Of a stretch of 64,000 nucleotides of DNA, positions 5,525 to 53,437 are shown piece by piece. The notes under the pieces were generated by a model that saw only the letters and a list, made by a program, of their open reading frames with translations, made no database searches and was not told where the DNA came from. Position numbers and translations under genes: made by a program. Numbering within the stretch: position 1 is the stretch's first letter; each line of letters starts with the position of its first letter. Source of the DNA: Cycas panzhihuaensis (taxonomy: Eukaryota > Plantae > Cycadophyta); the NCBI GenBank assembly GCA_023213395.1, contig CM041465.1:177389741-177453740 (forward strand). The letters run 5' to 3'.

Positions 5525-5900
5525 AAATGGTATAGAGCACCAAAGTTGATATTGAACTCCACAAATTACACTGTGGCTATTGATGTGTGGTATGTAGGCT
5601 GTATTTTTATGGAATTCATGAACCGACAGACCTTATTTCCAAGAAAGGACCATGTGTATCAACTACGTTTATTAATAGAGTTGATTAGGACGCCAACTGA
5701 GGTTGATCTAGGGTTTGTTTAGAGTGATCATGCGAGAAGATTTATTCAATAAGTGCCTTGAGATCTAAGGCAATCATTCACTACCTACATTACATGATGT
5801 TAGTGATAAGCCCACATGTTTCATACCATTCACCTTCAATTTTGAGCAATATGCCTTGATAGAGGAGTAGATGAAAGAATTGATATATAGGAAGGCCTTG
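5525..5900 (+). pseudogene. MPK6: Captured, intronless group A MAP kinase (MPK3/MPK6-type) fragment
   Basis: [82 protein letters not shown], then after a frameshifting deletion LHDVSDKPTCFIPFTFNFEQYALIEE*MKELIYRKAL. This matches kinase subdomains VIII-X and the C-terminal CD domain. MPK3 versus MPK6 is not resolvable here. Confidence 0.9.
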
Positions 5901-19919: not shown

Positions 19920-20368
19920 TGTTAAATAATGTCTAATGTTCTCTTTTAATACTACTTTATGTAACTTTATTATTGTAAGAATAGTTGAAAAGAGTAGTTA
20001 CCTTTTCAACAAACCTCTCTACCTATTTATTCTCCTAGATTCTAGGAAGAGAAAAAAGAATGAAGAACAAAATGTAATATTTTAGTCAATGCTGTATGGA
20101 GACGATTATGAGGCTGCAAACATGGTCAACTATGCACATTCTCAATTTTAGAGAGAGAGGATGAGATCCTACTCTATCTGTAATGTATAATCCATTTATT
20201 TATTAATATATTTATATTTTGAGGTGGTTTTCTTAATCCCCATTAGGGGGTTTTTTCCACCTGTCCAATATCTGTAAGCATTTGTATGATTATTATTTTT
20301 CTTGTAAATTATTTGAAGCAAATTACTTATTCTGTTAACATTTAATCAAATATTCCCTTTCTCTATCA
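19920..20368 (+). repeat. 5' LTR of Copia C
   Basis: tgtta...tatca, followed by the PBS. Confidence 0.92.
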
Positions 20369-23300
20369 TGGTATCATAGCAGGGTAGTTAACACATTTAA
20401 AATAACAAAAACTTATAATTTTTTCTATTATATAGCTAACACCAAATTTTTTTACATCTGTCTTGTAAGTCTGGCCTACTAAGATTACATACCGTCAAAT
20501 GTAAAATATCTATGAGGATATTATACAAAAATGGGTTGATAAACCCTCTCTCAAATAGATTTTATGAAGACTACTGAGATAAAACCCTAGTAAAGGAAAA
20601 ATCCTTTATCCAGCACAGAAAATTACTTGGAATCACTTGCTGTAGCCTGGAGGAGATCTTTACAAGACAAGCCATCCATGTGAAGTAGAAACCTCCAACA
20701 TAACTTCATACTACAAGGACCAAAGAAATCATCCAAGTTCTGTGATGAGACAAAACCCTGACTAAAACTAAAGAGTGTCATTAATCAATACTAAGAGTAC
20801 AAGTAAAGATGCCAAGAACACATATGAGATGCCAATAGAATAAGTAAGACACCAAGAACATAGTTGAGACGTCAAGACTGTAGATGAGATGCCAAGACAT
20901 CAAGATCACTGATAAAGATGCCAAGAAGCACCTATGAAGATGCGAAGAATGATCTGGTCACTAGTAAGTAATAAATACCCTTCTCAAACTTATACAAGCT
21001 ACACGGGATTCTAGTATACCCCAAAATTAGTCGATGCCACTGTAATTTGCACAAACTATATAAACGGGAATCCAACATAACCCATACCATCTATCATCGC
21101 CTCAAATCTTCAAAAACTACACGAACGGGAGCCAAGAATATGCTGCAGTCTGCGTGTATGAGTGAAATGAACCCTAGGTCATACTCCAATGAAACCCATT
21201 AAACATTAGTTTAATTTTTGGTTAGATCTAACTCCTTAATTAAATAATAAGAAAATCACTGTTATTTTAAAAATAGAACCCCCCCCCCCCTTTATTAATA
21301 ATTTTGAACCCTCTCCTTTAATAATAATCCCCTTTAATCTTTAATAAATGTAATTTCTTCCTCAATTACTTTTAAAATAATTTTTCCTTATTTAAACATA
21401 AGAACTTGCTTAATCCTTCATAAACACACCTTAGTTAATTGATTTCTAGATACCCTTCCTTAATCATATTTTTAATTTAGAAGGGTAAAACTTAAAGTTT
21501 TTCATATTTTTTAATGTTTGATCTAACTTAAAGTTATTATTAAGCCTCCCCCACCCTCCCCCCCCCATTGACCCTCACCCTGATCATTTAGGCCTCTTAA
21601 ATAACTCAGTCTAAGTAGACAAAGGGGTTAAACCCTTATTCAAATTTATTTTATTATTATTTTTTATTATTTTCTTCAAAGGGTGTACCAGTGTACTTTT
21701 AATTATAACTTTCTCATACAGAGTCATAATTTCATTCTGAAAGAAACATCAGTTTCCTAACTTAGAAATAGACTGTTTAGTTGGTCTTTCAATTTTTTTA
21801 ACATCATTTTGACCTAAAGATCTTTGCTCCAAATCTAGTCTTCTAATCAACCTGGTAAGATCAGGTACATGCTCCAAATTTATAATTTTTTCTCTCATAC
21901 TTTCTTAAAATACTTATCATAATGTTATTATGTCATTTCATGCAAATACTCAAATTAATGATTTAATTCTTTAATTGTAGTTATTATTGCAGTTTAATTA
22001 TTAATTGTTCAATGATTTTATGTGTTGAATTATTATTGTAATCTACTTCATCTTCACCTACAACCCAAATCTCTTTCCTTAAGAAGTTTTAAAATTATTG
22101 GGTTTTCAATATGGCTCTTATGCTAGGAACAACCTCCTATGTACAAATTCTGGTATTAACCGGCTCTAATTATGTCGACTAGAAAAATAGAATATCCAAT
22201 CAGCTTAAACAACAAAAGATATAATGATATGTCATAGGTGAGTTTCCAAAACCTAAAGATAAAACATCATAAGCTTATATAGTTTATCTCATGAACTGTG
22301 ATGGAGCTCTAGGGACCATCCTATCCTCCCTCTACCTAGACATTAGCAGGAAGTTCTTTGAAACAAATGATCTAGCTACTGTCTAGAAAACCCTTAAGAA
22401 AAAGTACGATAATATTGATACACAATAATCAACTGCATTAGAATAGTAAATGTATGATTTAAATTATGAAGATTTTTCTAAAGTTGATTTTTTTTTTCTT
22501 CTAAACTTTAACTCATTAACAAAGACCTAGTAAATTGTATTAAATCTTCTACAAAAGTAGGTGATAAATAAGTTATTGTGACACATGTAAAAGACGACAA
22601 TACACTTGTCTCTCTTATAATTAATAAACTGCCAAAATAGTTTAATCTCTTCAAAATCACTAGGCAACAGGCATGACATCCACCAATTACTTTTGATTAA
22701 TTAACGAATCAACTTATCGAATATCAAAATATGTTGATTTAGACTGGAAAATTAAAAGATCCTTCACAGACTTTTTTTCCAAGTCACAATCATTTTCTAA
22801 GTCTAAACATCAAAATAACTATCAAAATAGTCATCATTATCATCCTAAATTCTGAAAACCTCATAAAGGTTCATCTACTCAAAATAATTCTCATTATAAT
22901 GGTAAGTATTCTGGATTTCCTAAATCTCAGAATACCTTTAATCAAATATTTCCAAAAAGGAATACTGTGAATACTAATCCTAATCAGAACATCAACTATG
23001 CTTATTGTCATAAAAAGGGATACACCATTGATGTTTGTAGAAATATAGTTGCCTTTGAAGTCTAGAAAGCTTCTAAGGGGATCCAATCTCGATCCAACAA
23101 TTCTCATCACTCTTTAACTGCTTCTACAATATCTCTTTCAGCACCAGCCACTCAACTACCCTTGTGGATTCTTGATTCAGGTGCTTCCCATCACATGACA
23201 GGACACCAAGACTATCTCAATCCATATCAACTTGATTCAAGCTCTGAAGAAGAGATTTCTTTTGAGAGTGGAACCCAACTCAAAGTCAAAGAATTGGGTG

Positions 23301-23547
23301 ATGTTATATTAAAAGATGGATTAATTAACGATGTATTCTACATTCTTGGCTTATTACCTAATTTTCTTTCAGTATATCAAATCTACCAGAAAGATCTTGT
23401 CATAGAATTATGGAAATATAAGTTTATTATCAAATAACCATTAAATAGGTTTAAACCAATTGCCTCAGGACTTGAAGATCACAAAATAGGTCTTTACAGC
23501 TTCACACACCTCTAACATTCTAAATCCAAAACTTTTAGTACCTTTAT

Positions 23548-23964
23548 TGTTGGAGTTAATCATCACCACTCCACTCCCACCTTTCCAACTAGGATTGTAC
23601 ACCTCATCAACTTCAATTTAGACATGTGATGCTCAACATGTCAAGGTAAGTTAAGGTAAGTTTAACTTTGATTTATGTTAATTTGAGTTAGTTTTATTTG
23701 AGTTAAGTTGATATTATTTTATTATTATTTTAAATTCAGGAGTTGAGGAGTTTCTCTCCTCCCCCCAAATTATAAATATTGAGGGGTGTGCAACCCTGGT
23801 GTCTTTAGACACAGCCCTCATTTGGGAAATTTATAACTCTCTTCACTACAATGGAATGATTACAATGGATTTTCAGTTTATGCTACATTGATGTATAGCA
23901 ATATTGAGCTATGCGATTCTATTCTATGTTTTACCCTATTCTCCTATAAAATATTTTTCCTACA
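23548..23964 (+). repeat. 5' LTR of element D
   Basis: tgttgg...cctaca; repeat of 28671-29065. Confidence 0.92.
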
Positions 23965-25474
23965 TTTAGTATCAGAGCAGGCGATTGCTGATATGTGAAA
24001 TTTTTCGTGAAGAAGAAAAGAGATTTACTCGTATTTGAAGCTGATTTGCTCACATAAACAAATATTTAGTTACATTCTTTTTTCTGCAAGTTTTGATCAT
24101 TATTGAGTTATATTGGTGATATAACAAATATTTTTTAGGTTTATTTTTAGATTTGTGCAGATCTACACAGGATTTCAGTAGTAAGTTATATTTGCTTAAG
24201 TTTTTTCTTAAATTTGAGCTATATTTCTTTAGTTCTATATATTTTATCTTATATTTCATCATTATTTTAGTAGTAAGTTATATATATTTAAGTTTTTTCT
24301 CATATTTGAGTTATTTTTTTAAATCTACTACATTTCACTTTAGATCCGCTACATAGTCTACAGATCTGCTTATTTCAGCAGTTATTTGACCATTTCTCTA
24401 GGATACTCATTTAGATCTACAATATTTGGCTATAGATCTGCTATACTCACGTCAGATCTGCAATATTTAGCTTAAAATCTGTAATATTTTCTCAAGTTTT
24501 CTTTAGATTTATTATGTTCTCTTTTAGATCTATATCTTTTCATCATATATTTGATGATATTTTTTTAAGTTTGTTACAGATTTACAGTTATTTTTTGGTA
24601 TATTCAACCTTCTGGAAAAGTTTAAACAACAGATCTCACTTCTGTAAGTCAACTACAACCACATTTACCAAGTTCTTCAGTTATTTTTTCAATTTTAAAC
24701 ACATATTTTTTATACATTTGCTGCAATATATTTGAAAAGATTTCAGATACGTGTACATGCATCTTATTTGCTTGATATATTTCTGTCAAAATATTTGAGA
24801 TCTTTTATTTTCATTTGTGCTCTATTGAATCAACAAAAAAATTTCAACAATTTTCATGTTTTTTATACAAAAATATCTATATATATATTTTAAAATATTC
24901 TTCGTAGTCATTGGCTCATATCCAAACACTCAACATATGTTTGAAATATTTTTTCATAGTATACAAATTGTATGAACACTATTCCTGTTCAACAAAAAAA
25001 CTCAACATTGTTTTCATATTTTCTTTGTACAAATATATGATTTTTTGAAATAATACATTCTTTACAAAAAGAATACAATATTCCACACATTACATAGACG
25101 AAGATTTGGGATTTAGCCATCTACATTCCAAATCTCCTACTAAAATTTTAAATACTCAACAGTACACAGGGCACTTTATCAATATTTTTTTATTACAGTC
25201 ATTGCTTCCCACTTGAGTCATAGTGATAGGAATCTCAAGCTTCATTACTGCTTGCATGACTTGGATATGACTGCTTTCAACTTTTTGCATATTAAGCAAA
25301 TTTTTAGAGAATCACTACCTAAAGCTAGCTCCACCTACTGAGTTATCACCCAGGTTGCAACATTGAATATGTAACATAATCACAAAGAGAAAATTCTTTG
25401 AGTCATTCGCTGAAGGTTTGGCTTCACACCATAGTCTTTGGTCGGGTTTCACCCCTAATGAACCCTGGACATTG

Positions 25475-26367
25475 CTTGGTCCTCCAAAGAGGTCACGCAC
25501 ACAAGATGCTCCCATACCAACATATAGTTCAATAAACTCACTTGCTGAACAACTTATGAAAGGAACATTGGCTTCCCCAGCTACTACCTTTGCTAGAAGA
25601 GTCTTTCCTATCCCAAGCAGCCCAACTAGGAGGACTCCTTAGGGAGGACGAACACCGAGGCGTGCATACCTATCTGGGTTTTGTAGAAATTCAACAATTT
25701 CTTCAAGCTCCTCCTTTGCTTCATCAACTCCTGCAACATCAGCAAACATCACAATATCTCCATGATTGCCAGATTTTGATCTGCTAGAGCCCCTAGCCTT
25801 ACGGTTTCTCAGGTGACCAGTTAAATGTTGTGTAAATTTCATTGGAAATCGATTAAGAAGACTAGCAACCAAAGTAATATATAGAAGTGTGACAGTAATA
25901 GAGCGTTCTATAGCTTGTATAAAATCCTCCTTTCCCACCACTAGCTTGTTTGCTCGCCCTTCCAACAGAGCAGCTTCATTCACCAGATTTGCCAGGTCTA
26001 CCCCTGTGAAACTAGTAGTATCAATAGCAATCACATTTAAGTCCACGTCTGCAGCCAACATAAGTTGTTTTTTAGAAATATACACTTGTAAAATAGCTTC
26101 TCTGCCATGCCTATCAAGAGGCTCCACCATAACAATCTAGTTAAAATGACCAGGCCGATGAAGTGCTGGATCTAAAACATCTGCCTTGTTGGTTGCTCCA
26201 AGTACAATCACTGCTGAATTGTTGTCAAAACCATCCATCTTAATAAGCAACTGATTCAAGGTCTGCTCTCGTTCATCATTGCTAACAATACGAAGTCTAC
26301 CATTACGACTTTTAGCCACGACATCAATCTCATCAATGAAAATAATTGATGGTGCATCCTTCTTGGT
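25475..26367 (-). pseudogene. FTSH9: Intronless, circularly permuted FtsH7/FtsH9-type AAA+ protease fragment (candidate circRNA retrocopy)
   Basis: One reading frame with two internal stops: [15 protein letters not shown]...[18 protein letters not shown]...DFIQAIERSIT|VTLLYITLVASLLNRFP...FADVAGVDEAKEELEEIVEFL...GIGKTLLAK...[11 protein letters not shown]. Walker B/SRH comes before Walker A. FtsH7 versus FtsH9 is not resolvable here. Confidence 0.93.
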
Positions 26368-27951
26368 CATTGATCGATCTCACTGTGTGTAGGCAGCAAC
26401 ATTACAGCGGGCAGCAGTTGTGCAACAACAGTGCGCCCTAAATTAGAAATCAATTTTTAAAAATTCTTTCAATATATTTTTTAATATAAAGTTTTCAAAA
26501 AAATTAATTATTTTCTATATATTTTCGAATCTAGGGTTTTACAACATCTAACCTCCCCTTCATTCAGCCCCCAGTCACAAGTCACTATCATGTGACCATA
26601 ACTCATCAATAAAGGGGCTAATAAATTCTTTATTAACTATTTTCTTTTTTCTTTTTTTTCTTTTTTCAATTTTTATAGGGTTATTGGCAATTTTTACCAT
26701 AACTTCTCCTCGAAGCATCAGTTTCAGATGAAACCACTTTCATTGGGTTAGAAATTTTCTGTAGATCAATTTTGATTGATCATATGACCAATTTGGTGTT
26801 GATTTCACCCTGTTTCAGTCGATTTAAAGTTGATTAGTCATTTTTTCAACGTTTTTTAAACCTTTTATAAAATCATTTTTTGAACTGATTGTATTTTATT
26901 ATCAGGAAACTATTTTCTATACAAATTTATGCTAAAGCGGTCTACATTCAACAAACTTCATTACCCATCTTTTATTTTATTTTTAAGAATTCATTTTGAC
27001 CATTATTTTAATCACCCAAAGTGGCATTTTAGTGGTTTTTAGCATTTTTTTAAACATTTTACCATAAAGGTACATGTTACTATTTCTACTCTAACTTTTT
27101 TGTTTGACATCCAAATTCAGTTCCGTCAGTTTCGTTGGGAATCTGACTCAATTATCTTCGATCTAATATAGTTTTTTATACATTTTAATGTATTTTTATT
27201 GATTTTCAAATCACTCAAAGGAGAGGTACTTTATTACTTTAAACTTACCATATTTACACTTTTATATATATATATTTTAAAAAATTTTTAATTGAAAATA
27301 TATTGAGTAGTATTCTAAACAATATTTAATCATTTTTTAATATTTAATAAAGTTTTATTAGCATTTTTATATAATTTGGAGCCCTAGCTCCTGTTAGGCC
27401 TCAAAACAAGGTCTGTTTCCTTTGGATCATCAAAACTTGACTTATAGGAACCTAATTTCAAAATGGTTAATTTCATTGGATTCATATTTTGTTTATCTTC
27501 ATAATCGTAAAATTTCACATCATTCTAATATCATTTAGTATATTTTTTGAAGCTGTTTAACTTAAGGCTGTCTTCTAACCATTCCTTTAAAAACGTTTCT
27601 TCATACTCCTTATCTTTCAAAGTAAAATATACATATATTTTAGTTTTTTTAGCATTATACATTATTATCAAGGCTAAGGATTCATTGCATTGATAATTTA
27701 CATTTATTCATTTGAAGAAAATCTAAAAGTTAAGGTCTTATTTCAGATTTATATCGTTAAAAGAATATTGGTATATGATTTTAAAGTTACTTCTATATTC
27801 ATTATTTCCTTATTGTAGTGAGTTCATTTATTTTCAAAAGGCATTACATTTCTTTTGAAGAGTATATTTGACATCATACAAGCTTAATCACTTATTGACT
27901 TTATTTGATTTGATAAAAGTATACTTTATATATTCTAAAATTTTTTATAAC

Positions 27952-28623
27952 ATGGGATAATTACCTATATTTGATGGGCAAAATTTTTTAGAATAGCACA
28001 AGGTTGTAAAAAACTATTTTATTGCACATGATTTATGGAAATATTTGTAAGATGACTATGATGTTAGTATTAAGGAAAACATTAGAAAGGATAATGAAGC
28101 ATTATGATTATTATTTTACACTATAAATGATGATGTTTTCTGAAAGGTTTCTAAATTAACAACTTCTAAATTAGTTTGGAATGTATTGATTTCTACTTAT
28201 GGGGGAGATACCCTCCTTGTATTTGATGATATTTTTGTTGATCATGTGAGACAACTAACAGAACAGGTAGATCATGATGATAAAACCAATGAAGATTCAG
28301 ATCAAATGCAGGACCAACTTGCTACACAAGTACCTGATCCTCCATTTAAGGGGGAGAATGAAAATGAATCCTATGACATGATGGAGAATGAATCTGATAT
28401 GATAGTTATTGACAACATACATATTACAAAAGATAAAGTTCAAATTCAATTTTTTCTCAATATTCCAGTTGACAAAGTTGAAGTTGCATCTATACATACA
28501 TACTTGAATCAAGCATCATCTACTTACAATTTCTTTGTATCATTCTTTGGTAAAGAGATATATTCTGCAAGAAGGTTGAAGTATATTAATGAAGATCAGA
28601 ATTTTCAAGTACAAGTTCCATAA
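27952..28623 (+). pseudogene. Truncated Copia gag N-terminus fused to an acidic ORF (element D)
   Basis: MG*LPIFDGQNFLE*HKVVKNYFIAHDLWKY...RKDNEAL...TTSKLVWNVLISTYGGD, running in frame into ORF 28186-28623. Confidence 0.75.
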
Positions 28624-28670
28624 GTTTAAGTAAAAGATACAAGTGTTCATGATGACATTAAGGGGGAGAA

Positions 28671-29065
28671 TGCTAGAGTTAATCGTCATCACTCCACTCC
28701 CACCTTTCCAACCAAGATTGTACACCTCATCAACTTCAATTTAGACATATGATACTCAACATGTCAAGGTAAGTTTAACTTTGATTTATGTTAAGTTGAG
28801 TTAGTTTCATTTAAGTTAAGTTAACATTATTTTATTATTATTTTGAATTCAGAGGTTGAGGAGTTTCCCTCCTCCTCCAAATTATAAATATTAAGGGGTG
28901 TGCAACCTTGGTGTCTTTAGACACTGCCCTCATTTAGGAAATTTATAACTCTCTTCACTACAATGGAATGATTACAATGGATTTTCATTTTATGCTACAT
29001 TGATGTATAGCAATATTGGGCTATGTGATTCTATTCTATGTTCGGCTCTGTTCTCCTGCAAAATC
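28671..29065 (+). repeat. 3' LTR of element D (last ~12 bp deleted)
   Basis: Repeat of 23548-23952; similarity stops at tgcaaaat. Confidence 0.88.
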
Positions 29066-31814
29066 TGACCCTGTCAGTAAGCTTTGACATGCTAGATTTG
29101 GTCATACGAGTTATGGAAAACTCTAGTACCTAAGTAATAATGATATGGTTCATGGCTTACCTACACTAAAAACTATCTATGGTGTTTGTGAAGCCTGTGT
29201 AATAGGCAAACAACACATGGATACTTTCCAAAATCACACTACCTTTTGAGCAAAAGCTTCACTCGAACTTATTCATTTTGATATTTGCGGTCCATTTTGA
29301 GTTCCTTCATACTCTGAAAGTAGATATTTTGTTACATTTATTGATGACTTTTTAAGAAAATACTGGGTACGCATGTTAAAAATAAGAAGTCAAGTATTTG
29401 ACATCTTTATTGAATACAAAACCTTAGTAAAAAATCAAACAAATTCTAAAATTAAAATCTTTAGAACAGATAATGCTAAGGAATACTTAAGCAATAATTT
29501 TACTAATTATTGTAAAAAGCATGGAATATAATTTCAACATTCAGTAGCACATACTCCTTAACAAAATAATATTACTGAATGCAAAAATTATATACTTGTT
29601 GAAATGACTAGATACATGTTACACGAAAAAGATCTTAACTTAAAGCTATGGATAGAAACTATTACTAGCTCCAACTATTTATTAAATCATTTACCATACA
29701 AATCCTTACAAAATATTACGCTAGAACAAAAATGGTCTAAACGTAAACCTTCTGTTAAACACTTAAAAATCTTTGGAAGCATTGCTTAAGGATATGTTCC
29801 CAAAGAAAAACACCAAAAATTTGATCCTAAAAGTTTCAAATACATCTTCGTTGGTTACAATGAAGAAAGTAAAGCTTATAAACTTTTAAATCCAACCACA
29901 CATAAGATTTTAATAATCCATGGTGTTATATTTGATGAAGAAGACTCTTCATCAAAAACTTCTTATATGGAACTTCTAATTAAAAAATTGTTAACAAATG
30001 TTTACCTAATTGATCCTAATGATATTAAACCTAATCCTGAATCAATTGAATCCTTATATACTCAAGTTTAAAACTAGACTTTAAAAGAATTCAACACTTC
30101 TACTACACCTAGTTAGCCCACTTCACCAAAGCAATAAACTAATAAATAACTTATTTGGGCTTAGAAAACTCTTTTTGATGTTGGTTTTAATGTTGGTAAT
30201 CCTTTGGATACCAGAAGAACTCGTTCACAAAACCTTCAATCTAATTTTGCTCTAATTTCTAAAATTATAGCTAGTGATAATCCTAAAACTTTTAAGCAAT
30301 CAAGTAATAATCCTATATGGCAACAAGCCATGCAAGTTGAAATAGATACTATTAAAAAGAACTCAACTTGGGATTTAGTTGCTCTACCTCCTGAAAAGAA
30401 TGTAGTCGGTTGTAAATGGGTTTATCGAACTAAGTTTAACTCTAAAGGAGTAGTTGAGAAACACAAAGCTCGTTTAGTGGTAAAAAGTTTTTCACAAATT
30501 GATGGTATTGATTATAATCAAACCTTTGCTCGAGTAGCTAAAATGAACACTATTAAAACTATTATAGTCCTAGAAGCTAAATTTAGTTAGAAAATCCATC
30601 AGATGGATGTAAATAGTGTATCCTTAAATGATGATCTTAAAGAAGAAATCTACATGAATCAACTTCTTAGATTTGTTTATAAGCCTAACCTTGTTTGTAA
30701 ATTACGAAAATCTATCTATAGCTTAAAATAAGTTCCTCGAGCTTGGTATATAAAAATAGATGATTCTTTTATATAAAAGAGATACACTAAATGTATTAGT
30801 GATCCTAATCTTTACTTTGGACGCGAAAATAACAATATTACTATCTTAATTCTCTATGTGGATGATATAATTATCACTAGATCCTTACTCTCCAGTATTC
30901 ATCAATTAAAATCAATCTTAATGAATAAATTTGAAATGTTTGACTTAGGTCTTTTACACTATTTTCTAGGATTACAAATTTATCAAACTAATTCTGAAAT
31001 AACGATATCTTAACCTAAATATATTTTAGATCTAATCAAACGATTTAATATGGAAAATGATAAATCATCTCTAAATCCTTTATAGTCAGGTATTAAACTA
31101 TCTACTAATTGTTCTACATCACTTTGTGATCCAACAATATATCGACAACTCATAGGTAGTCTCATTTATCTAAGTCATACTCATCCTAATATATCCTATG
31201 CTATTGCCTTATGCTATAGATATATGCAAAATCCTTATGAGTCTCACTGGAAAATAACTAAACAAATTTTAAGATACCTACAAGGTACAATATACTATAG
31301 CCTAACTTATAACTCTTGTAAAAATAACCTAAAATTAATAGGTTACATAGATTCAGATTGGGTAGGAGACTCTGATGATCATAAATCTACTGCCGGTTAT
31401 ATTTTCTTTTTAGACTCTTCACCAATTACTTGGTCCAGTAAAAAGATGTAAGCTTTAGCTTTATCCACAGCTGAAGCTGAATATCGAGCTCTTGTTGAAG
31501 CTAGAAAAGAATCACTTTAGATAAAATCTCTTTTAAATGAACTTGGTCTATTTTCTAACTCACCCATTGAACTTAATGTTGATAATTAAGGAGCCATATC
31601 TATTGCTACTAATCTAATTACTTATTCAAGGATAAAACATATAGAATTATATCAACATTTTATATGTAACCTTATAAATGATGAAACTATTCACTTGTCT
31701 TATTATCTTACAGATATATAAATTACAAATATACTTATAAAGCTATTGACTGAAGTAAAGTTTTTAAAGCTTAGAGATCTGTTGAAGATAAAAGAAGTCT
31801 TCATCAAAGGAGGA

Positions 31815-32262
31815 TGTTAAATAATATCTAATGTTCTCTTTTAATATTACTTTATGTAACTTTATTATTGTAATAATAATTGAAAAGAGTATTTATCTTT
31901 TTAATGAACCTCTCTACCTATTTATTCTCCTAGATTCTAGGAAGAAAAAAAAGAATGAAGAACAAAATATAATATTTTGGTCAATACTGCATGGAGATGA
32001 TTATGAGGTTGTAGACATGGTTAACTATGTACATTCTTAATTTTAGAGAGAGAGGATGAGATCCTACTCTATCTATAATATATAATCTATTTATTTATTA
32101 ATATATTTATATTTTGAGGTGGTTTTTTAAATCTCCATTAGGGGGTTTTTTCACCTATCTAATATCTATAAGCATTTGTATGATTATTACTTTTCTTATA
32201 AATTATATAAAGCAAATTACTTATTCTGTTAACAATTAATTAAATATTCCCTCTCTCCATCA
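31815..32262 (+). repeat. 3' LTR of Copia C
   Basis: Repeat of 19920-20368, followed by TSD atgat. Confidence 0.92.
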
Positions 32263-35200
32263 ATGATGATTCTTTTACCCTTAGAATCATATAGTTTATA
32301 AGATCTTGATGTATCACTATATCCTATAAATATTCACTTAGTGATTTTATCATTTAACTTAGTCCTTCTTTATTTTAGAACATATGCATATACTATGCAT
32401 ATAAGAACTCTTAAGTATTTGATACTTGGCTTATGACTTATCTAAGCCTCTTCAGGTGTGACCCATCTACCTAACTTTGTTGTGTATTTGTTCAACAAGT
32501 AAATAATTGTATGAATATCTTTCGCTAAGATTCTTATCCTTTAGCATAATGTTAGCCCTCTCAATAGTAATGATTAGTGGGTTGTTCTATTTGCAATAGT
32601 TTTTATATTTATTTGAAATGAATTCTCCCCCATTAGATGATTTAAGGGTTAATATTTTATGGCCACCTTATTTTTTAATTATTACTTTGAAATCAATAAA
32701 GCATTGAAGTTCATCTAACTTAAATTTGAGAAAATAAACCCAAGTTATTCTTGTGATGTCATTAATAAAAGTTATGAAGTAGTTTGCTCCTCCAAGTGAT
32801 GACACATTCATTTGTTCACAAAGATCTGTGTACGCTAGTTGAAGAAACCTATTTGCTTTATAGTTTTCATTAGGGAATCCTTATCTTTGTTGCTAGTTTA
32901 GTGTAGATCCATTCCATACTTCTTTTCCATGTTTAATGTTAGGTAGACCAACTACCATTTCCATTTTTTTCATTAATGCTAAGTTATTACAATTCACATA
33001 GCTAAATCTTTTATGCCATGTCTCATTATCCATATTAAATGATGCCTTAGAGGCATAGTATTCATTTAGGGGTATGGTCAACTTAAATAGTTTATCACTT
33101 GTCATTTGACCCTTAGTAACTATGACTTTATTCTTTAACTTGTCCTTAATTATGCACTCATCATTGTCAAAGATAATTTTATACTTTTGCTCCATTACTT
33201 GTCTAACTAATAACAAGTTCTTCTTGGGTGTAAGGACATTAGGTATATCATTGATGCACTTAGTCTCTCCAAAGTCTATTTAGATGGTTATATTTTCTTT
33301 ACCTATTATGGCTTAAGTAGTATTATCCTTAAATATGATTTTATTTATTTGAGTATTTCTAACTTTTTAAATCATTCTTTCCTATGTGTTATATGAGTAG
33401 AGTAACCTAAATCAATATACTAACTATCCTCCTTTTAATTGGCCATAAGACTTGATAGGAAAAGTCTTTCACTCTTCCTTAGTTATTCAACTATTATATT
33501 TATTATCCCTCTTTGAATGTTATACCTTATTATGAAACAATTATTTTCTAAGTATCAATTTCTATGACAATAAGAACAATGTATTGTTCCTCTTCCTCTA
33601 CCTCTAAGAATCCTTCCTCTTTGTCCTTATTTCCTTCCTCTTGGACATTGTCCTCTACCTCTTCTTTGTGGTTCAAACCTTGTCCTTGACCTTGATTAAA
33701 TTGGCTTTGATAGATTTATCTTTGTATTTGACTTTGTCCTTGATAGAATTGACCTAGATTTTGATAAAATTGACTTTATCTTTGATGAAATTGCCTTTGG
33801 TTTTTAAACTTTTATCCTATTTCTTTAAGAATTTGATCTCTTTCTCTAAAACTTTGGCCTTCATAGGATGGCTTGATTTTTACCTTAGTGAAAAATACAT
33901 ATTCTAATGACTTACTACCACCTTTCTTCTATTCAATATCTAATAACATAGTACTAAGATAATTAATCTTGAGTTTTGTAAGATCTTTGGAAACCTTAAT
34001 GCTTGTAGCTACAAATTCAAACCTCTTGATGCCACTAATACACCTTAATTTTTTTTCTACCATCCTTTGTTTACTAGTAACTTCTCCTAATGCCTTCATT
34101 TGATTAACTAGGCCTTATAATTTATTTATAAATTCATTAATCTCCTCATTATTATTTATCTTATAATTTTAAAATCTAGTCCTTAATGTTTAAAGTTTTG
34201 ATATAATTGCTCCTTCATAGGTGGTCGTCAAAGCATCTCATGCCTCTTTTGATGTAGTTACCTTACTAATTCTTGGGAAGATGTGGTCCTCTAAAGTACA
34301 AAGGATGAATGCCAAGGCTTCATTGTCCCTCTTTTCATTCTCCTTAAACATCTTCTTCTTATTTGTAGTAGTGTTATGATCAAGTGTACCATATCCATTT
34401 TCAATTAAATACCACATCTTTTTATAAGCCAAATTGTCCCTAATCAACTTTGGTACATGCACAAGTGTTCTAATTAGTACTGAACCTCCTCCAAGATAAA
34501 GATTTTGTATTAGATTGTGATTATAAAGTGAAGTTTTTTCTAAGTTTATTTAAAGGGTTAACTTGTAGAAAGTCCACAAACTTGCATCAACTTTGAACAT
34601 TAAAATAATATATCAAATGATTTAAAACATATTAAATGACCTTTCACTTTATAGAGAATTAAAATATAAATCCAATGCTTTAAAGAAAACTTAATTTTGA
34701 CACTTTATGGTAAAATAATGGCTTAAATAATATAAGGAGGTCAATTTTAATAAGTAACCCTAAGTACATAAATTGTAACAAAAAACTTACATCAACTTTA
34801 TCTCCTTAAATGGACTACTAAACACAAACCCAATATAGTCATATGACCATTTGTTTTATTTGAGTGAAAATAAAGATCACTCTACAGTTGATAGATCTTA
34901 AAATGCGCCCCACAAGTGACAATTATACTCATTGAAGTAGTCACAAGTACTTAAACTAAGGTAAGCTTCTTAAAATGCAGTTTATCCCTTTTAAAAAAGT
35001 GGTCTTCTAGTCACTTGGATGTTATATATGACCTAGAAATCTGAATATCAAGGGGGCTACAAGCTAATAAAACCTAGCAAAATATAGAAAATGATTAATT
35101 TTTTTAAGCGATTAGTATTAAATCACTTAAAACTATTAGCATCAATATTAAATAATTAGTATCACCTTTCATTGAATTCTAGAAATAGTTATTAGATTTA

Positions 35201-42159: not shown

Positions 42160-43552
42160 AGATGGTCATGCATAAGTAGGTATACATTGGACAAAGTTTT
42201 CAAATTATAGGTTATCAGGTTATACTAGCTCAACCCTTCACTAAGGATTAACTTCTCCAACAATCGAGAGAATAGTCATAGGTTACAATGATTAAGTAGA
42301 GATTTTCATATCTTTAGGTCTTCATTTGTCCTTATAGATCTATAAAGGAGTGCAGGAGGTTATTTTTTGTTGTTGTAGGTGTAAGACAACTAGTACCCCT
42401 TATTTTTGTAGATCCAACCTTTGAATACTCAATTGCCAATTAAGGATCAATAGATATACTTGTGCGTGATTAAAGAAGGTGATATTAAAGATAGAAGTTA
42501 TGTTTGTAGACATTGGCTTCATATTGAGGTAGTATAGGTGAAACATAGATAAAGAGGTAGAGACTAGCCATAATATTTGTTGTAGGCTATTAAGAAAGTT
42601 GTTAACTAAGCATATTGCCTCTTATGCAACTAGAGTGTGAGGAAGTAAAAGAGTTGCAATCCATAGAGATGTTATTAGTATTGGCATTGGCAGCACATTC
42701 GCTAATCGTGATCACTTGTTCAGACTTAGAGTAATCTTAGAAGTTACCAAACATAGAGTGAATTATGGTTATACACAAATTAAAGCCATAGTAGCCATCG
42801 TAGGTTGTTAATATGGATTACGGTCATAGAGGACTCACAAGTCAAGTTTCCTTGTGTCTTATTTAATTGTCAGCTTCTACAGTAAATTTTATCTATGCTT
42901 CATGATACACACAATGTTTGTTTATGTTGCTAGAGAGAGACAAAGACAAAAAAATGTTATGCAGCTATAGTGAGCATAGACTCATAGCCAACAATACGTG
43001 ATTACACTAAGAATAAGACATAGATAGTCATAGTTAAAGTTGTCATTGTATTTATACCTTTGTGGAAGGTATTTCAAATAGTGTTTTGCCCTTTTGTATT
43101 AAAATTAAAATAAATATATTGAATTGCTTTTTGGATATGATGTTTTGAAATTCAAAAGTTGGCACAAATATATCTGGTAAGGATTTTTTAATATAATGGT
43201 GATTATACATTATGTGAATGTATGATATGTGGCATATGATGTTTTCATGTTTGGGCATTCATTGTAAGAAGAGAATATTGTTGTATGCTGTTGTATATTG
43301 AGGTGATTTGTTATGCACATGAATTGATTATTGTGTGAAACACCTCTTGTTTCATTTATTTGAGGCAAGATCCTTTACAATATAAAGGCACTTTCATGAT
43401 ATTGATATAATATCTTCTTGAGGTAATGTGTTGTGTGAGATAATTAGATAAAGGTAACTCCTTAAGTGAGGTATATACATCAGTGGTCTAGGTAGATAGA
43501 TGTTTTTAATCATTGTAATATTACATTGATTTTAGGGTGGTGTTTTATTTAA

Positions 43553-44581
<1,029 letters not shown>

Positions 44582-47261
44582 ACTATAACAATGTTTAATT
44601 AAATCATACTTGTGAAGAGTTTTTAAAGTTCTTTCTTTGAATAGTCTTTTGCCTTATTTGTAAGTGGTTATTAGTCTTGTTGAAGCCTTTATATTCTAAG
44701 TTGTTGATCGAACTATTTTTGGGGAGGGGAATTTAGCTAATTAGAGGTTGGTTTAGGTTCTTTATATTTTCCAATTATACACCATGAAGAAGTTGGTTCC
44801 TTTGGTCAACTTTGTTGGAACTTTAACGAATAAAAGGAAAATACAGAATTGGTCCTCATGGTTAACTAGCTTTGGGGTATTACCAAATTTGAAATACTGG
44901 CTATTTCCTTAGATGGGAAAGAATATATATTGTTGGGACAATGCCTATTCTCAACATGTGTGTGCATACACCTAGGGCCCCCAAAGCCACTTAAGGTCAC
45001 GTAAAGCCCACCAGCGCTGCCATGCAACTATCTATGAGGATACTAAGGTATGTATTATGTTTATTTTATATAATTTTTTATTGTTTATTTAAATTATCAA
45101 GTAGAGGCATTTACCGCCTCTCTAAAACTATATATACTAAGGGGATACCTCCCTGGTATTTTTTAACATCGCTAACTATTCAGAAAACTTGGTATACTTT
45201 GAATAATGGATTCATCATTGTAATCTTTAGTTCACTCTACTCCTTGCACCTACATTTGGTACCATAGCATCAATCTACTCTCACGACAAGAAAATATTTT
45301 ATTATTTTGTCAGTTTTATAAAGTTTATTAATATTTTTTTATATTTTTTTGTTAATATTTAGTTATTATTAATACATATGCTCCATTTTATCAACATTTC
45401 TTCAAAAATTTACAACTGTAGCATGCATATTTATCCCAACAATCATTTGATGTAATTATTTTGAGGTTTCATTTGATTTTATGCAAGATTTTAATAGTTT
45501 TTCATATTTTTTTAAGGTTTTATCAAGTTCCTAAAATTTGGCAGGCTAATATGATATCCACACTACTCAGAACCACATCAAGTGACAACCCATTGGACTC
45601 CTCTCTGAGTCCTCTTCACTCCAGAAAAGACGGTTTGAAAAACCATCACTCCTATGATGAGTTATAGCTCCTTGAAGCCCAGTATACCTCATTACTTGTT
45701 GAAACCCCCAGGCACCAAACTGGAAATTGCTCCATTTGGCTTTATTTCTGGCTAGATCTTCATGCAACTTGGTAGCAAGGTATTTTTAATCTTTTAGAGT
45801 CTGTTCATAATGATTTTCTAGCCTTGTTTTAGTCGTATGACCCCTATGCCATCCATGATCTCCTTATATTTGGTAGGCTCATTCTCAGTCTATAGATATA
45901 TGTTCCTTAAGAAATTTTAGGGGCATCTCAAAATCAATAAGAGCAAGGCTCCACTCCGATTTCACCACATTTTGTAATATGTGCGAGAAGAATAAGCTCC
46001 CTGAGTGTCCTCCATCTGTCTACCCTTTGTTATTACATTTTGATGATTTTATATATTAAAAATTATATTTGTTTGAAATATTTCTCATCAATCTCATCTC
46101 CAGATCTGTGGCACTCCCTTACATAGTGATTTTGATCTATTTCTAACTAATTTTCATCATTTTTTTATTAAAAAAAAATGTTTATGCATCATCATTTGCT
46201 GTACAACTTGCGTGATCATTCTTTGTATTCAAAATTCATTTTTTTAGAGTTTTTTTTAGTTGATCCTCATTACAGATCTATGGCACAACTCTCATGATCA
46301 AATTTAATCATTTTTAGCCCATTCTAGATAGATTTTAATAGATAAAAACACCTCTATACTTTGTTATTTTTATGACCGTCGTTTTTTAATTAAAAATCTT
46401 ATTTTTTTTCAAAGTTTTAGATTAATTTAATTACATTGGAGTTTGATTTAGAGTCTGCACCATTTTTGGGCTCAAGCCCCCTTTGTGAGCTGGCCCCCAG
46501 TCTCGTGAGACCTTCATGTGACCACGATCTATGGTAGATTTCAAATTTGAATAAGCTCTTTTGAATTTTTTATTTTATTTTTCAAAAATTATATTTGTTA
46601 TTTAATAATTTTTGAGATCTGGTGCCCCCCTTAGGGTTATATCGATTGGTCCCATGGCCATACATATGACTATAAGCCCATTCACAAAGGAGTTAAAGGA
46701 CTAATCCATATTTTTTTATTTTGATTTTTTGCCTAAAGAATGACTATTTACTTTTTTAGCTATATCTCTCCACTAGGAAGTTAATTTCATGAATCGTTAG
46801 ACTTGTTGGATTCCTAACTCAGAGCTCTACAAACTAGAGTCCTCATTTACTTGATTTGAGCTATTTTTTATAAAGTTTAATCAATTTAAAGTTTACATTA
46901 ATTTATTGCTCATATTTCATTAGCTATAAAAGGGTCTTTTCACCATTTCTTTAATAACTTGAGTTCTATAGCTCTGTTTCTCGAGCTATCTGAACCGTTG
47001 GAAAGTTTTTAGAGCTCTTCACAATAGAATAGGTTTCATCATATTCTAACATCATTTTGTAGGTCATTAAAACTATTAAAGTCAATGCTCTATTTTAGTC
47101 CTAGTTTGACACTTTTAGGAATATTTTAAGCTAAATTTTCTTTCCAACTAAATATATTTAATTGATATTTATATATTAACTGATTATTAACGATATTTGT
47201 TAATGTTTATAAGATTTACAAGCTATGTTTTAGACTTTTAACATCATTTTTGGTTTCTGGA

Positions 47262-47476: not shown

Positions 47477-49269
47477 CTCCCCCATAATGTACATTTGGAA
47501 AAAATCTCAAGCCTTCCTTAAGTTTGTAATACTTGAACCTTGACAATGCCTTTATAAATATATCAATAATCTGATCTTCTATTCTATAATCTACAAGTTT
47601 AATCTGTCCCTCTTGAACTAGCTCTCAAATGTAATGGTGTTTAATCTCGATGTACTTTGTTCTTGCATGTAAGACTGAGTTTTTTGACAGTTGTATTGTG
47701 CTTTGATTGTCACAATGAATCACTATAGGATTGCTTTGCCTTTAATGTAGATCTTTAAGTAGTCTTCTAATCCAAACAACTTCTTAACTTGCCACTTTAG
47801 CTACTTTGTATTCTACTTCTGCTGTGGATAATGACATAATGGGTTGCTTCTTTGTATTCCAAGATATTGCTACTAAACCAATGTTGAATACATAACCTAT
47901 CATAGATTTTCTATCTTATATATTATTAGCCCAATCTATGTCAGAATAGTTAACTAGATTGCATTTATTTGAAGAGTTATAAAAAAGACCATGATCAATT
48001 GTTCCTTTGATGTACCCGAGAATTTTCTTGGTAGCATTCTAGTGTTTTTGCTTACGATTTGCCATGAACCTCAAAGTAAGGTTAACTACATATGTTATAT
48101 CTAGTCTTATATTAGTTAGGTACATGGGGTTTCCAAGTAACTGATGATATGGAGTGGGGTCAACTAACATGGATTCTTCATGCTTACTTAGCTTTAATCC
48201 AACTTCAATGGGAATAGCGTAGGGATTACAATTGCTCATGTTGAATTTCCTTAAAATATCTATAGCATATTTTCTTTGAGACATTTATATTCTGCTATTA
48301 TCTTGACATACTTCAATTTTAAGAAAATAATGTAATTGTCCTAAGTCCATCATCTCGAACTCAGAATTCATATCATTTTTTAATTTTTAAAGTAATTCAT
48401 CATTATCTCCAGTGTAAATTAAATCATCAACATACACTATAACAATCAAAATAGAGTTCTTAGAGGTTTTTATGTAAAGATTTAAATATGAGTTACTTCT
48501 TTGAAACTCCTTATCCTAAAGATATTTATCAATCCTTGTATACTAAGCTCTTAGTGCTTATTTTAATCCATATACAACCTTTTCGAGTTTGCATACCAAA
48601 TGTTCATGTCCCTTGACATCAAAACCTTGACGTTGCAAGACATAAATTTCTTCATCAACATATCCATTAAGAAAGGCTGATTTAACATCCATCTAATAGA
48701 CTTTCCAACCAAGATGAGCAGTTAGAGATATAATACTCCTAATTGTAGTCATCTTAGTAATGGGAGCAAAGGTTTCTTCATAATCTATACCTTGTTATTG
48801 AGCATAGCCCTTTACAACTAATCTAGTTTTATATTTTTCAATAGTACCATTAGCCTTGTATTTGGTCTTATATATCCATTTGGTTCCAATAACATTCTTA
48901 CCTAGTGGTAATTCAACCAAATCCCATGTTTTATTTCAACTTAATGTATCAAATTTTGCATCCATTACTTGAGTCCATTCATTACTTTTTATAGCTTCTT
49001 CAAAAGTTTGAGGTTCATCTTTCTGCATCACTTGAGACATTAGAGCATAATTTACTTTAGCTTGAGATCTTGTGAATCTCTTTTTTTTTTTTGATAAGGT
49101 AAAAAATAATATTATAAGGGTGTTTTTTTTGCCAGGTCCCCAAACCTTATACATCAAGGGCCATCCGGCCTAAGAAAGATGACCATGAAAGGCCCATGGC
49201 CTAGCTCACTCTAAGATCACTCCATTCACCTCCTGCCTGTTACCATTATGTCTAGAAGATTCTATTCTA

Positions 49270-52200: not shown

Positions 52201-53437
52201 TCTGTAAATAACTCTTTAAAGTAATCCATTGCTATTCCTCTTATATGATCTTTAGTATCATTCATGACTCCATCCTTACTTTGCATTTTACTTATTCTAT
52301 TATAGGATCTATGTTTCAATGCTGACAAATGGAAGAACTTAGTGTTTCTGTCTCCCGCCTTTATCCATTGCTCCCTCAATTTATGCTTCCAATGTATTTC
52401 CTCCCTGGACAATACCTCCTCCAATCTTTTGGTGGTTGAATGTTCTAATTGATCCAAATCCTATGACCTACCCTAAGTTTGGATCCTTTCTTCTATCCTC
52501 TTTAGCTCATCCCATAGGTATCCCTTATCTTCAAAGATGTTTCCAAACACCTCCTTATTCCATATTTTAATTTATTTTTTGATCCAGTCTAGCTTGTTCA
52601 AAAATTTGAACATAGCAAACCCTAGCACAGTGTATCCCCACCATTCACTAATCTTTTCTCGAAGATTGGGATGTTGTTGCTACATTAATTCAAAGCGGAA
52701 TGGGGCCCCACCTTGCTTCCCTAGATAGAAAGACTCCATAACCAAAGGGGAATGATCTGAGGCTATTTTCGGGAGAGCCTCAAGCTTGATATCCTCAAAC
52801 TAGTAAGTCCATTCATAGTTGGTTAACATTCTGTCTAACTTGATCTGGACATGACTATGACCCAATCTCCTATTAGACTAGGTGTACTTGGCTCCCCTTA
52901 AGGGGATATCCATTAGGCCACCGGATTGCAAAAAATCCTCGAAATTAAACATACTCCTGGACCATCCCTCTTGACCCTCTTTCTTTTCCTCCAGGTTGAG
53001 AGTTGTATTAAAATCCCCAACCACCAGCTAAGGGCCTTTCCATTCCTTATGTGCCTCCACTATTCTTTCCCATAACCTCTTCCTTCCCTCCATCGTTGTA
53101 GGGGCATATATATTGGTTATCCAGCAAGGCCTGTTTTTCCTCACACAAGCCATACAAAGTGTGATGAAGTGTTTACTTTTGACCACCACAGATCCTTTCC
53201 ACTTATCTGGATTCCAGAGAGTAGCCAACCTCCCAGAGCCCAATGGTCCCTCTAAGGCACACCGTTCCCCCCTCCTCCAGATCTTCTTGAATACCTATAT
53301 CTCCTTTTTCTGCTTGATTTTTGTCTCTTGCAATAGGACTATGTCCACACTCGTCCTAATCCTCATTTCCTTGACCATTCTCTACTTTGATGGGGCATTA
53401 AGACCTTTATATTCTAAGATAAGACCTTGATGGTCAT
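49270..53437 (-). pseudogene. L1 ORF2: AP endonuclease, RT, zf-RVT, RNase H (disrupted)
   Basis: MTIKVLS*NI, NIYAP, GDFN, SDHSP, GDRNTKFFH, FRLISLCNV, GDPLSP, HQFVDD, IRFWENKW, KINFNGVAKGNP, VIVEGDSL. Confidence 0.9.

What the first reader, a model, noticed from the sequence alone, without database searches (positions are those of the whole stretch)
25475..26367. Fossil circular RNA: a back-spliced FtsH7/9 circle retrocopied into an LTR element
Seen in the sequence: the FtsH piece has no introns and is an exact circular permutation. It starts mid-protein at (T)KKDAPS, runs to ERSIT, jumps in frame at 25894/25893 back to the far-upstream VTLLYITLVASLLNRFP, and ends at RDLF, right where it began (native RDLFARAKK). 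The unit is 887 nt, or 888 nt (296 codons) after restoring one deleted base near 25484. That equals my count of 296 residues from IVLFY to ERSIA in Arabidopsis FtsH9 as recalled. Also recalled, needing a check: phase-0 introns at NSAL|IALFY and ERSIA|GIEKK in this gene family, which would make the join a downstream donor spliced to an upstream acceptor. Inference: a multi-exon circRNA was reverse transcribed once around and fixed in element D. CircRNA-derived pseudogenes are described in mammals; I know of no described plant case carried inside an LTR element.
Basis: partly seen in the sequence, partly recalled or inferred. Interest (0 to 1): 0.95.

Follow-up and report, generated by a model that had tools for sequence, protein, structure and literature searches.

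The report
DNA fossil of a circular FtsH RNA
A decayed, intron-free copy of eight exons of a chloroplast FtsH7/9 protease gene sits backwards inside an old plant jumping gene, with its last exon joined to its first exactly at the splice sites; this is best read as a DNA copy of a circular RNA, a thing described so far in mammals.

Summary
Minus strand 26368-25475 is an intronless, circularly permuted FtsH7/9 fragment.

- **Reference gene:** a complete plant FtsH7/9 gene was fetched (L005). Its block from VALIY to ERSIA is 8 exons, 888 nt, bounded by two phase-0 introns.
- **Fit:** each of the 8 exons sits on the fossil without gaps, in the order 4'-5-6-7-8|1-2-3-4. The exon 8/exon 1 join is exactly at 25894/25893.
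- **Length:** the piece is one turn (887 nt, one base lost) plus a 7-nt terminal redundancy. It is flanked by a 5-nt direct repeat and has no poly(A).
- **Decay:** two stop codons, one frameshift, and almost only G>A or C>T changes.
- **Host:** it lies antisense in a roughly 5.5-kb LTR element with no recognisable coding capacity, nested in a Copia element. The closest proteins are from gymnosperms.

The best reading (about 0.8) is a one-turn cDNA of a back-spliced circRNA. How it entered the DNA is unresolved.

Earlier notes of this scan, all unchecked, list a second FtsH7/9 back-splice junction 67 Mb away and circle-like SelO, CSN6 and VAC14 fossils in the same genome. I found no published plant case.

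The parts
25475..26368 (-). Whole FtsH7/9-derived piece: one turn of the exon 1-8 block (887 nt) plus a 7-nt terminal redundancy. It is intronless, decayed and has no poly(A).
26329..26368 (-). Tail of the exon 4 equivalent ([13 protein letters not shown]). This is the 5' end of the piece.
26242..26328 (-). Exon 5 equivalent (87 nt).
   Evidence: Ungapped placement, 67/87 matches to L005 exon 5
26128..26241 (-). Exon 6 equivalent (114 nt). Contains the in-frame stop TAG at 26137-26139.
26003..26127 (-). Exon 7 equivalent (125 nt).
25894..26002 (-). Exon 8 equivalent (109 nt). Ends with ERSIT, which is ERSIA in relatives. It is the donor side of the back-splice.
25893..25894 (-). Back-splice junction: the last base of exon 8 joined to the first base of exon 1, in frame (phase 0 on both sides).
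25828..25893 (-). Exon 1 equivalent (66 nt). Starts with VTLLY, which is VALLY/IALFY in relatives. It is the acceptor side of the back-splice.
25693..25827 (-). Exon 2 equivalent (135 nt).
25627..25692 (-). Exon 3 equivalent (66 nt). Contains the in-frame stop TAA at 25639-25641.
25475..25626 (-). Head of the exon 4 equivalent (Walker A region to RDLF..TK), with a 1-nt deletion near 25484. This is the 3' end of the piece.
26362..26368 (-). 5' copy of the 7-nt terminal redundancy GACCAAG.
25475..25481 (-). 3' copy of the 7-nt terminal redundancy GACCAAG.
26368..26372 (-). Flanking direct repeat CAATG, upstream copy. It shares its G with the redundancy.
   Evidence: Chance estimate 0.2-1.6%
25470..25474 (-). 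Flanking direct repeat CAATG, downstream copy.
23548..23969 (+). 5' LTR of the host element. It is followed by a PBS-like TAGTATCAGAGC at 23967-23978.
28671..29081 (+). 3' LTR of the host element. It is preceded by the polypurine tract AAGGGGGAGAA at 28660-28670. Element target-site duplication: CTTTA (23542-23546) and CTTTG (29082-29086).
19920..20368 (+). 5' LTR of the outer Copia element that the host element interrupts. PBS TGGTATCATAGC at 20369-20380.
31815..32263 (+). 3' LTR of the outer Copia element.

Best explanation
A pre-mRNA of the FtsH7/9 gene of this plant was back-spliced. The plant is most likely a gymnosperm. The donor after the ERSIA exon was joined to the acceptor before the (V/I)AL(L/F)Y exon, and the introns between them were removed. 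This gave an 888-nt circular RNA of eight exons. A reverse transcriptase started inside the exon 4 equivalent and copied the circle once. It ran 7 nt into its own start and stopped. The cDNA became fixed, antisense, in the internal region of an LTR element with no recognisable coding capacity, which itself sits in a Copia element. The copy has since decayed by cytosine deamination and has no function as a protein.

Shown here: the circular permutation, the exon-exact junction, the absence of introns, the one-turn length with terminal overlap, the absence of poly(A), the decay, and the host-element anatomy.

Inferred: the circRNA itself, the single-round copying, and the route of insertion. Two routes are possible. 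One is insertion of a free cDNA at a 5-bp staggered break, which the CAATG direct repeat favours. The other is a template switch during plus-strand synthesis inside the particle, which would explain the antisense orientation.
For: (1) The junction is exon-exact. In L005 the block is bounded by ...ctgcag|GTA GCT (VALIY) and ...ATA GCA|gtatgt (ERSIA), both phase 0. It has 8 exons of 66, 135, 66, 186, 87, 114, 125 and 109 nt, 888 nt in all. Each exon placed alone and ungapped on the fossil abuts the next with no overlap or gap, with exon 8 ending at 25894 and exon 1 starting at 25893.
(2) The boundaries are conserved. ORFs from other plant genomic contigs stop matching at ER(S/A)(I/L)A and read on with V (GTN) in at least 9 cases. 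They start matching at (I/V)ALFY after Q or K (NAG) in at least 7 cases.
(3) A random non-colinear join would hit a donor and an acceptor boundary with probability of about 4e-5.
(4) The length is one period plus 7 nt. For a partial copy of a linear repeated-exon RNA the chance is about 0.7%.
(5) Only circle exons are present. There is no upstream or downstream FtsH sequence in 64 kb and no A-run at either end.
(6) The decay is genuine and old. There are two stops and one frameshift. At 218 residues invariant in five gymnosperm-type proteins the fossil differs at 31, and 26 of these fit a single G>A or C>T change and none fits A>G or T>C.
(7) There is precedent. CircRNA-derived pseudogenes with reversed exon-exon junctions, few terminal A residues and LTR-rich flanks are described in mouse and human (PMC4897178).
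Against: The 5-nt flanking repeat is short (chance 0.2-1.6%). No empty-site copy of the host element was available. Antisense orientation does not fit the usual model of LTR-mediated capture during minus-strand synthesis (PMC5131818).
Confidence: 0.8

Rival explanations
1. A linear transcript with exon repetition was partly reverse transcribed from mid exon 4 to mid exon 4. Such a transcript could arise by trans-splicing of two FtsH7/9 pre-mRNAs, or from a parental paralogue with a tandemly duplicated exon 1-8 block.
For: It would give the same exon-exact 8|1 junction. The parental locus of this genome was not seen.
Against: Start and end coincide to within 7 nt of exactly one period, about 0.7% by chance. 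None of more than 120 full-length FtsH7/9 proteins retrieved shows a duplicated AAA block. Back-splicing is much the commoner source of such junctions (established knowledge).
Confidence: 0.08
2. A DNA-level rearrangement of an ordinary linear retrocopy produced the permutation, either by tandem duplication followed by deletions or by excision as a DNA circle and re-insertion.
For: A circular permutation can arise this way. The 7-nt overlap and the short flanking repeat resemble microhomology repair.
Against: The linear fragment's two ends would have to lie exactly on an acceptor and a donor boundary, about 4e-5 by chance. No RNA or cDNA species other than a spliced circle has both of those ends.
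Confidence: 0.04
3. The reverse transcriptase jumped between two linear FtsH mRNAs, or across the ends of a folded linear RNA, creating the non-colinear join without any circle. This is the caveat named in PMC4897178.
For: Template switching by LTR-element reverse transcriptases is well documented (PMC5131818). The caveat is stated.
Against: A jump has no reason to leave one template at the last base of an exon and land on the first base of another. There is no microhomology at the join beyond what the exons themselves supply.
Confidence: 0.04
4. The permutation is an assembly or chimeric-read artefact.
For: Raw reads could not be examined.
Against: An artefact would not make a base-exact, in-frame exon 8/exon 1 join. 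The piece is embedded in unique element sequence and carries old GC>AT decay like its surroundings.
Confidence: 0.03

Closest known systems
CircRNA-derived pseudogenes of mouse and human (Dong et al. 2016, Cell Res 26:747, PMC4897178), such as the circRFWD2 exon 6-exon 2 copies
   Same: It is an intronless copy limited to the circle's exons, with a reversed exon-exon junction at splice sites and no real poly(A). It is associated with LTR elements, as the flanks of the mouse copies are.
   Different: The host is a plant, probably a gymnosperm. Here the copy is exactly one turn with a 7-nt terminal overlap and a 5-nt flanking repeat. It lies antisense between the two LTRs of one defined element. 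The source circRNA has not been observed.
LTR-mediated retroposition of host mRNAs (Tan et al. 2016, PMC5131818; maize Bs1)
   Same: A spliced host-gene fragment lies between the LTRs of an element that has lost its own coding capacity, without poly(A).
   Different: The template was circular rather than linear. The orientation is antisense. The flanks look like a simple insertion with a short duplication rather than replacement of element sequence. Microsimilarity at switch points could not be tested.
LINE-type processed pseudogenes
   Same: It is an intronless, dead copy of a host transcript.
   Different: It has no poly(A), no 7-20 bp target duplication and no 5' truncation pattern, and its exon order is not colinear.

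Membership tests
circRNA-derived processed pseudogene (criteria of PMC4897178) | Intronless copy of parental exons | tested here: met
   All 8 exon equivalents abut without gaps, so 7 internal introns are absent.
circRNA-derived processed pseudogene (criteria of PMC4897178) | Non-colinear exon-exon junction (downstream donor joined to upstream acceptor) at real splice sites | tested here: met
   25894/25893 matches ERSIA|gt and ag|VALIY, phase 0, in L005 and in more than 15 ORFs of other plants. It was not tested on the parental gene of this genome.
circRNA-derived processed pseudogene (criteria of PMC4897178) | Sequence confined to the circle's exons | tested here: met
   There is no FtsH similarity outside P0001 residues 288-585 anywhere in the window.
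circRNA-derived processed pseudogene (criteria of PMC4897178) | No canonical poly(A) tail | tested here: met
   Both flanks were read and neither has an A-run.
circRNA-derived processed pseudogene (criteria of PMC4897178) | A matching circRNA exists in the species | not testable with these tools
LTR-mediated retroposition by template switch (PMC5131818) | Retrocopy lies between the two LTRs of one element | tested here: met
   LTRs at 23548-23969 and 28671-29081, with a PBS-like site, a polypurine tract and a target-site duplication.
LTR-mediated retroposition by template switch (PMC5131818) | Microsimilarity between element and host RNA at both switch points, with element sequence replaced | not testable with these tools
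   There is no cargo-free copy of this element in the window. The CAATG duplication points to a simple insertion instead.
LTR-mediated retroposition by template switch (PMC5131818) | Sense orientation, as expected for capture during minus-strand synthesis | tested here: not met
   The element is on the + strand (PBS and polypurine tract). The FtsH piece is on the - strand.
LINE-mediated processed pseudogene | 3' poly(A) and a 7-20 bp target-site duplication | tested here: not met
   No poly(A) and only a 5-nt flanking repeat.

The most novel reading that the evidence does not exclude
In this AT-rich, probably gymnosperm genome, Copia-type particles reverse transcribe circular RNAs repeatedly and load them, antisense, into defective LTR elements that then spread. 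The genome would then hold a fossil record of ancient multi-exon plant circRNAs (FtsH7/9 twice, SelO, CSN6, VAC14 by unchecked notes of this scan). That would reveal an undescribed circRNA-to-DNA route in plants.
Probability: 0.35. Interest if true: 0.85.

Novelty: new member of a known kind. Interest (0 to 1): 0.68.

Why it matters
CircRNA-derived pseudogenes are documented in mouse and human. My full-text searches found no plant case.

This one is unusually clean: eight exons, a base-exact back-splice, and exactly one turn with a small terminal overlap. It therefore says something about how a reverse transcriptase handles a circular template in vivo. The enzyme appears to go round once and stop at its own start.

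It also shows that an 888-nt multi-exon circRNA of a chloroplast protease gene existed millions of years ago in this lineage. LTR divergence is about 0.12.

If the other circle-like fossils noted in this genome hold up, circRNA capture by LTR elements would be a recurrent process that can be studied genome-wide.

Tried and rejected
- **Parental locus:** The loci of P0001 (gymnosperm-type transcript) and P0002 could not be fetched.
- **Other copies of the junction:** none turned up among short proteins. The window's own ORF is not in that collection.
- **Cargo-free copy of the host element:** none in the window.
- **Inverted repeats between the two flanking introns of L005:** none. This is a different species, so it carries little weight.
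- **Rfam on the window:** nothing.
- **Host element coding capacity:** Pfam found no gag or pol domain in the host element's internal ORFs. A gag-like motif I thought I saw near 28144-28215 was not supported, so I dropped it.
- **GC-richer flanks of the FtsH piece (25150-25474 and 26369-26450):** six-frame reading shows no recognisable protein.
- **Published circRNA from plant FtsH7/9:** only an FTSH4 circRNA in cucumber was found.
- **Joined sequences:** L005 exons were compared with the fossil one by one. They were concatenated only inside a script to choose splice sites and count length.

Full report
**What is there**

On the minus strand, 26370-25475 translates as FtsH sequence. It begins mid-protein at (T)KKDAPS, runs to ERSIT, continues in frame with VTLLYITLVASLLNRFP, and ends at RDLF. 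Pfam places AAA positions 54-123 first, then the AAA lid, then AAA positions 1-50. The domain is therefore circularly permuted.

A scan of 1.8 billion representative proteins gave an 822-aa FtsH7/9-type protein, P0001, as the best match. tblastn of P0001 against the whole window gives only two hits:
- residues 430-585 at 26364-25897 (E 3e-71);
- residues 288-426 at 25902-25486 (E 6e-55).

Nothing else in the 64 kb resembles FtsH. The unit V291-A586 is 296 residues.

I took two other routes.

*Route 1: single-exon ORFs.* The protein collections hold many short ORFs called on plant genomic contigs. Each is a single exon read on into its introns.
- At least seven start to match exactly at (I/V)ALFY, after Q or K (codon NAG). 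Examples are P0020, P0026, P0018, P0151, P0237, P0197 and P0171.
- At least nine stop matching exactly after ER(S/A)(I/L)A and read on with V (GTN). Examples are P0030, P0002, P0394, P0397, P0398, P0453, P0489, P0496, P0510, P0395 and P0396.

*Route 2: a complete reference gene.* A JGI metagenome contig, L005 (11.7 kb), carries a complete plant FtsH7/9 gene. Its DNA reads:
- NSAL|gtaagg ... ctgcag|GTA GCT (VALIY);
- ATA GCA (ERSIA)|gtatgt ... atcag|GGG ATA (GIEKK).

Both boundaries are phase 0. Between them lie 8 exons of 66, 135, 66, 186, 87, 114, 125 and 109 nt, 888 nt or 296 codons in all. In L005 the block is bracketed by an intron of about 1.5 kb and one of 659 nt. The internal introns are 77-257 nt.

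**Exon-by-exon fit**

I placed each L005 exon alone and without gaps on the fossil. The best positions tile perfectly (the exon 4 limits come):

| Exon equivalent | Window position (minus strand) |
|---|---|
| 4 (tail) | 26368-26329 |
| 5 | 26328-26242 |
| 6 | 26241-26128 |
| 7 | 26127-26003 |
| 8 | 26002-25894 |
| 1 | 25893-25828 |
| 2 | 25827-25693 |
| 3 | 25692-25627 |
| 4 (head) | 25626 to about 25475 |

The join 25894/25893 is therefore, to the base, the donor of exon 8 joined to the acceptor of exon 1. All seven internal introns are gone. A random non-colinear join would hit a donor and an acceptor boundary with probability of about 4e-5.

**The ends**

- The 5' end begins with GACCAAG (26368-26362). 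The 3' end finishes with the same GACCAAG (25481-25475).
- Both copies correspond to the same place in exon 4 (..R-A/T-K..), and homology to FtsH stops right there on both sides.
- The length is 894 nt: 888, minus one deleted base near 25484, plus 7.
- Both 7-mers carry A where relatives encode Ala (GCN), as expected if both were copied from one template position.
- Outside them lies a direct repeat CAATG (26372-26368 and 25474-25470). Its chance expectation is 0.2% at fixed position and 1.6% with one base of slack.
- There is no A-run at either end.

**State of the copy**

- There are two in-frame stops (26137-26139 and 25639-25641) and one frameshift.
- Of 218 residues invariant in five gymnosperm-type FtsH7/9 proteins, the fossil differs at 31.
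- Of those 31, 26 fit a single G>A or C>T change and none fits A>G or T>C. This is the signature of methyl-cytosine decay.
- It is an old, dead, resident sequence, not contamination.

**Host**

- The piece lies in a roughly 5.5-kb element on the + strand.
- Its LTRs are at 23548-23969 and 28671-29081, with K2P about 0.12.
- It has a PBS-like TAGTATCAGAGC, a polypurine tract AAGGGGGAGAA, and a target duplication CTTTA/CTTTG.
- Removing the element restores a YLWHARFGH reading (with W now a stop codon) in an outer Copia element. I recognise that motif as the Copia integrase N-terminus from memory only; it was not checked against Pfam.
- The outer Copia has LTRs at 19920-20368 and 31815-32263, a tRNA-Met PBS, and Pol_BBD and RVT_2 domains. 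Its LTR K2P is also about 0.12.
- The inner element has no recognisable gag or pol.
- The FtsH piece is antisense to it.

**Organism**

The fossil is closest to gymnosperm FtsH7/9:

| Source | Identity to the fossil |
|---|---|
| Wollemia | 80.8% |
| Cryptomeria | 79.1% |
| Ginkgo | 76% |
| Angiosperms | at most 75% |

. The genomic ORFs and L005 that gave the intron positions are angiosperm, and L005 is nearest to monocots. Conservation of the two introns in the true parent is therefore inferred. The perfect tiling and the junction itself support it.

**Explanation**

An exon block with both ends exactly on splice sites, joined head to tail, exists in cells as a back-spliced circRNA. The one-turn length with a 7-nt overlap is what is expected if a reverse transcriptase goes once round a circle and stalls on meeting the 5' end of its own product.

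The rivals score low:
- **Linear exon repetition (about 8%).** For a partial copy of a linear exon-repetition transcript the same length would be a coincidence of about 0.7%.
- **DNA-level permutation of a linear retrocopy (about 4%).** It cannot explain the exon-exact ends.
- **Template jump between linear RNAs (about 4%).** A jump has no reason to leave and land exactly on exon ends.
- **Assembly artefact (about 3%).** It cannot make an in-frame exon-exon join in decayed DNA.

**How it entered the DNA is not settled**

The CAATG duplication suggests a free cDNA inserted at a 5-bp staggered break. Five bp is also the spacing that Copia-type integrases leave, as the host element's own CTTTA/CTTTG shows.

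The antisense orientation would instead fit a switch of plus-strand synthesis onto the RNA circle inside the particle. The usual model, capture during minus-strand synthesis (PMC5131818), predicts sense orientation and does not fit.

**Comparison with what is known**

The piece meets every sequence criterion of Dong et al. 2016 for a high-confidence circRNA-derived pseudogene. That paper also reports LTR-rich flanks for the mouse copies (PMC4897178). Three full-text searches found no plant case. I file it as a new member of a known kind.

**Context from this scan (AI notes, not checked by me)**

- A second 'back-splice-like junction in the FtsH7/9 retrocopy' is noted 67.36 Mb beyond this window.
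- Circle-like fossils of SelO, CSN6 and VAC14 inside Copia elements are noted elsewhere in the genome.
- Many notes describe defective Copia-type elements with antisense host-gene cargo.

If these hold, the capture is recurrent and the cargo may have been mobilised with its element.

**Limits**

No reads, no RNA and no parental locus were examined. Exons were compared one by one, and they were concatenated only inside a script to pick splice sites and count length.

Noticed in passing
window 5546-5722 (+): An ORF fragment matches protein kinase subdomains (Pfam Pkinase positions 168-203, E 7e-6).
   Followed up: partly
window 25150-25474 and 26369-26450: The GC-richer island (38-47% against 20-30% around it) extends about 320 nt and about 80 nt beyond the FtsH piece on either side. 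Six-frame reading shows no recognisable protein. It could be further non-coding cargo or original element sequence.
   Followed up: partly
window 43501-44600: A roughly 1.1-kb array of short units (8-12 nt spacing) creates spurious long ORFs on both strands.
   Followed up: no
window 48000-56000: This stretch has markedly higher GC (37-43%) than the rest of the window (about 30%). It was not examined.
   Followed up: no
protein P0002 (251 aa, from the representative library): A predicted protein from another plant starts exactly at IALFY and ends exactly at ERSIA|V.., with the middle exons (Walker A to LLT) skipped. It is a partial FtsH7/9 duplicate bounded by the same two introns as the circle. 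Its locus could not be fetched.
   Followed up: no
L005:1065-2567 and L005:4242-4900: In the reference plant gene, the two introns that flank the circle-forming exon block are about 1.5 kb and 659 nt. Those inside the block are 77-257 nt. No inverted repeats were found between the two flanking introns.
   Followed up: partly
window 23542-23546 / 29082-29086: The host element's insertion site lies in a YLWHARFGH reading of the outer Copia, which I recognise from memory as its integrase N-terminus. The two LTR pairs have about the same divergence (K2P about 0.12), although the inner element must be the younger insertion.
   Followed up: partly
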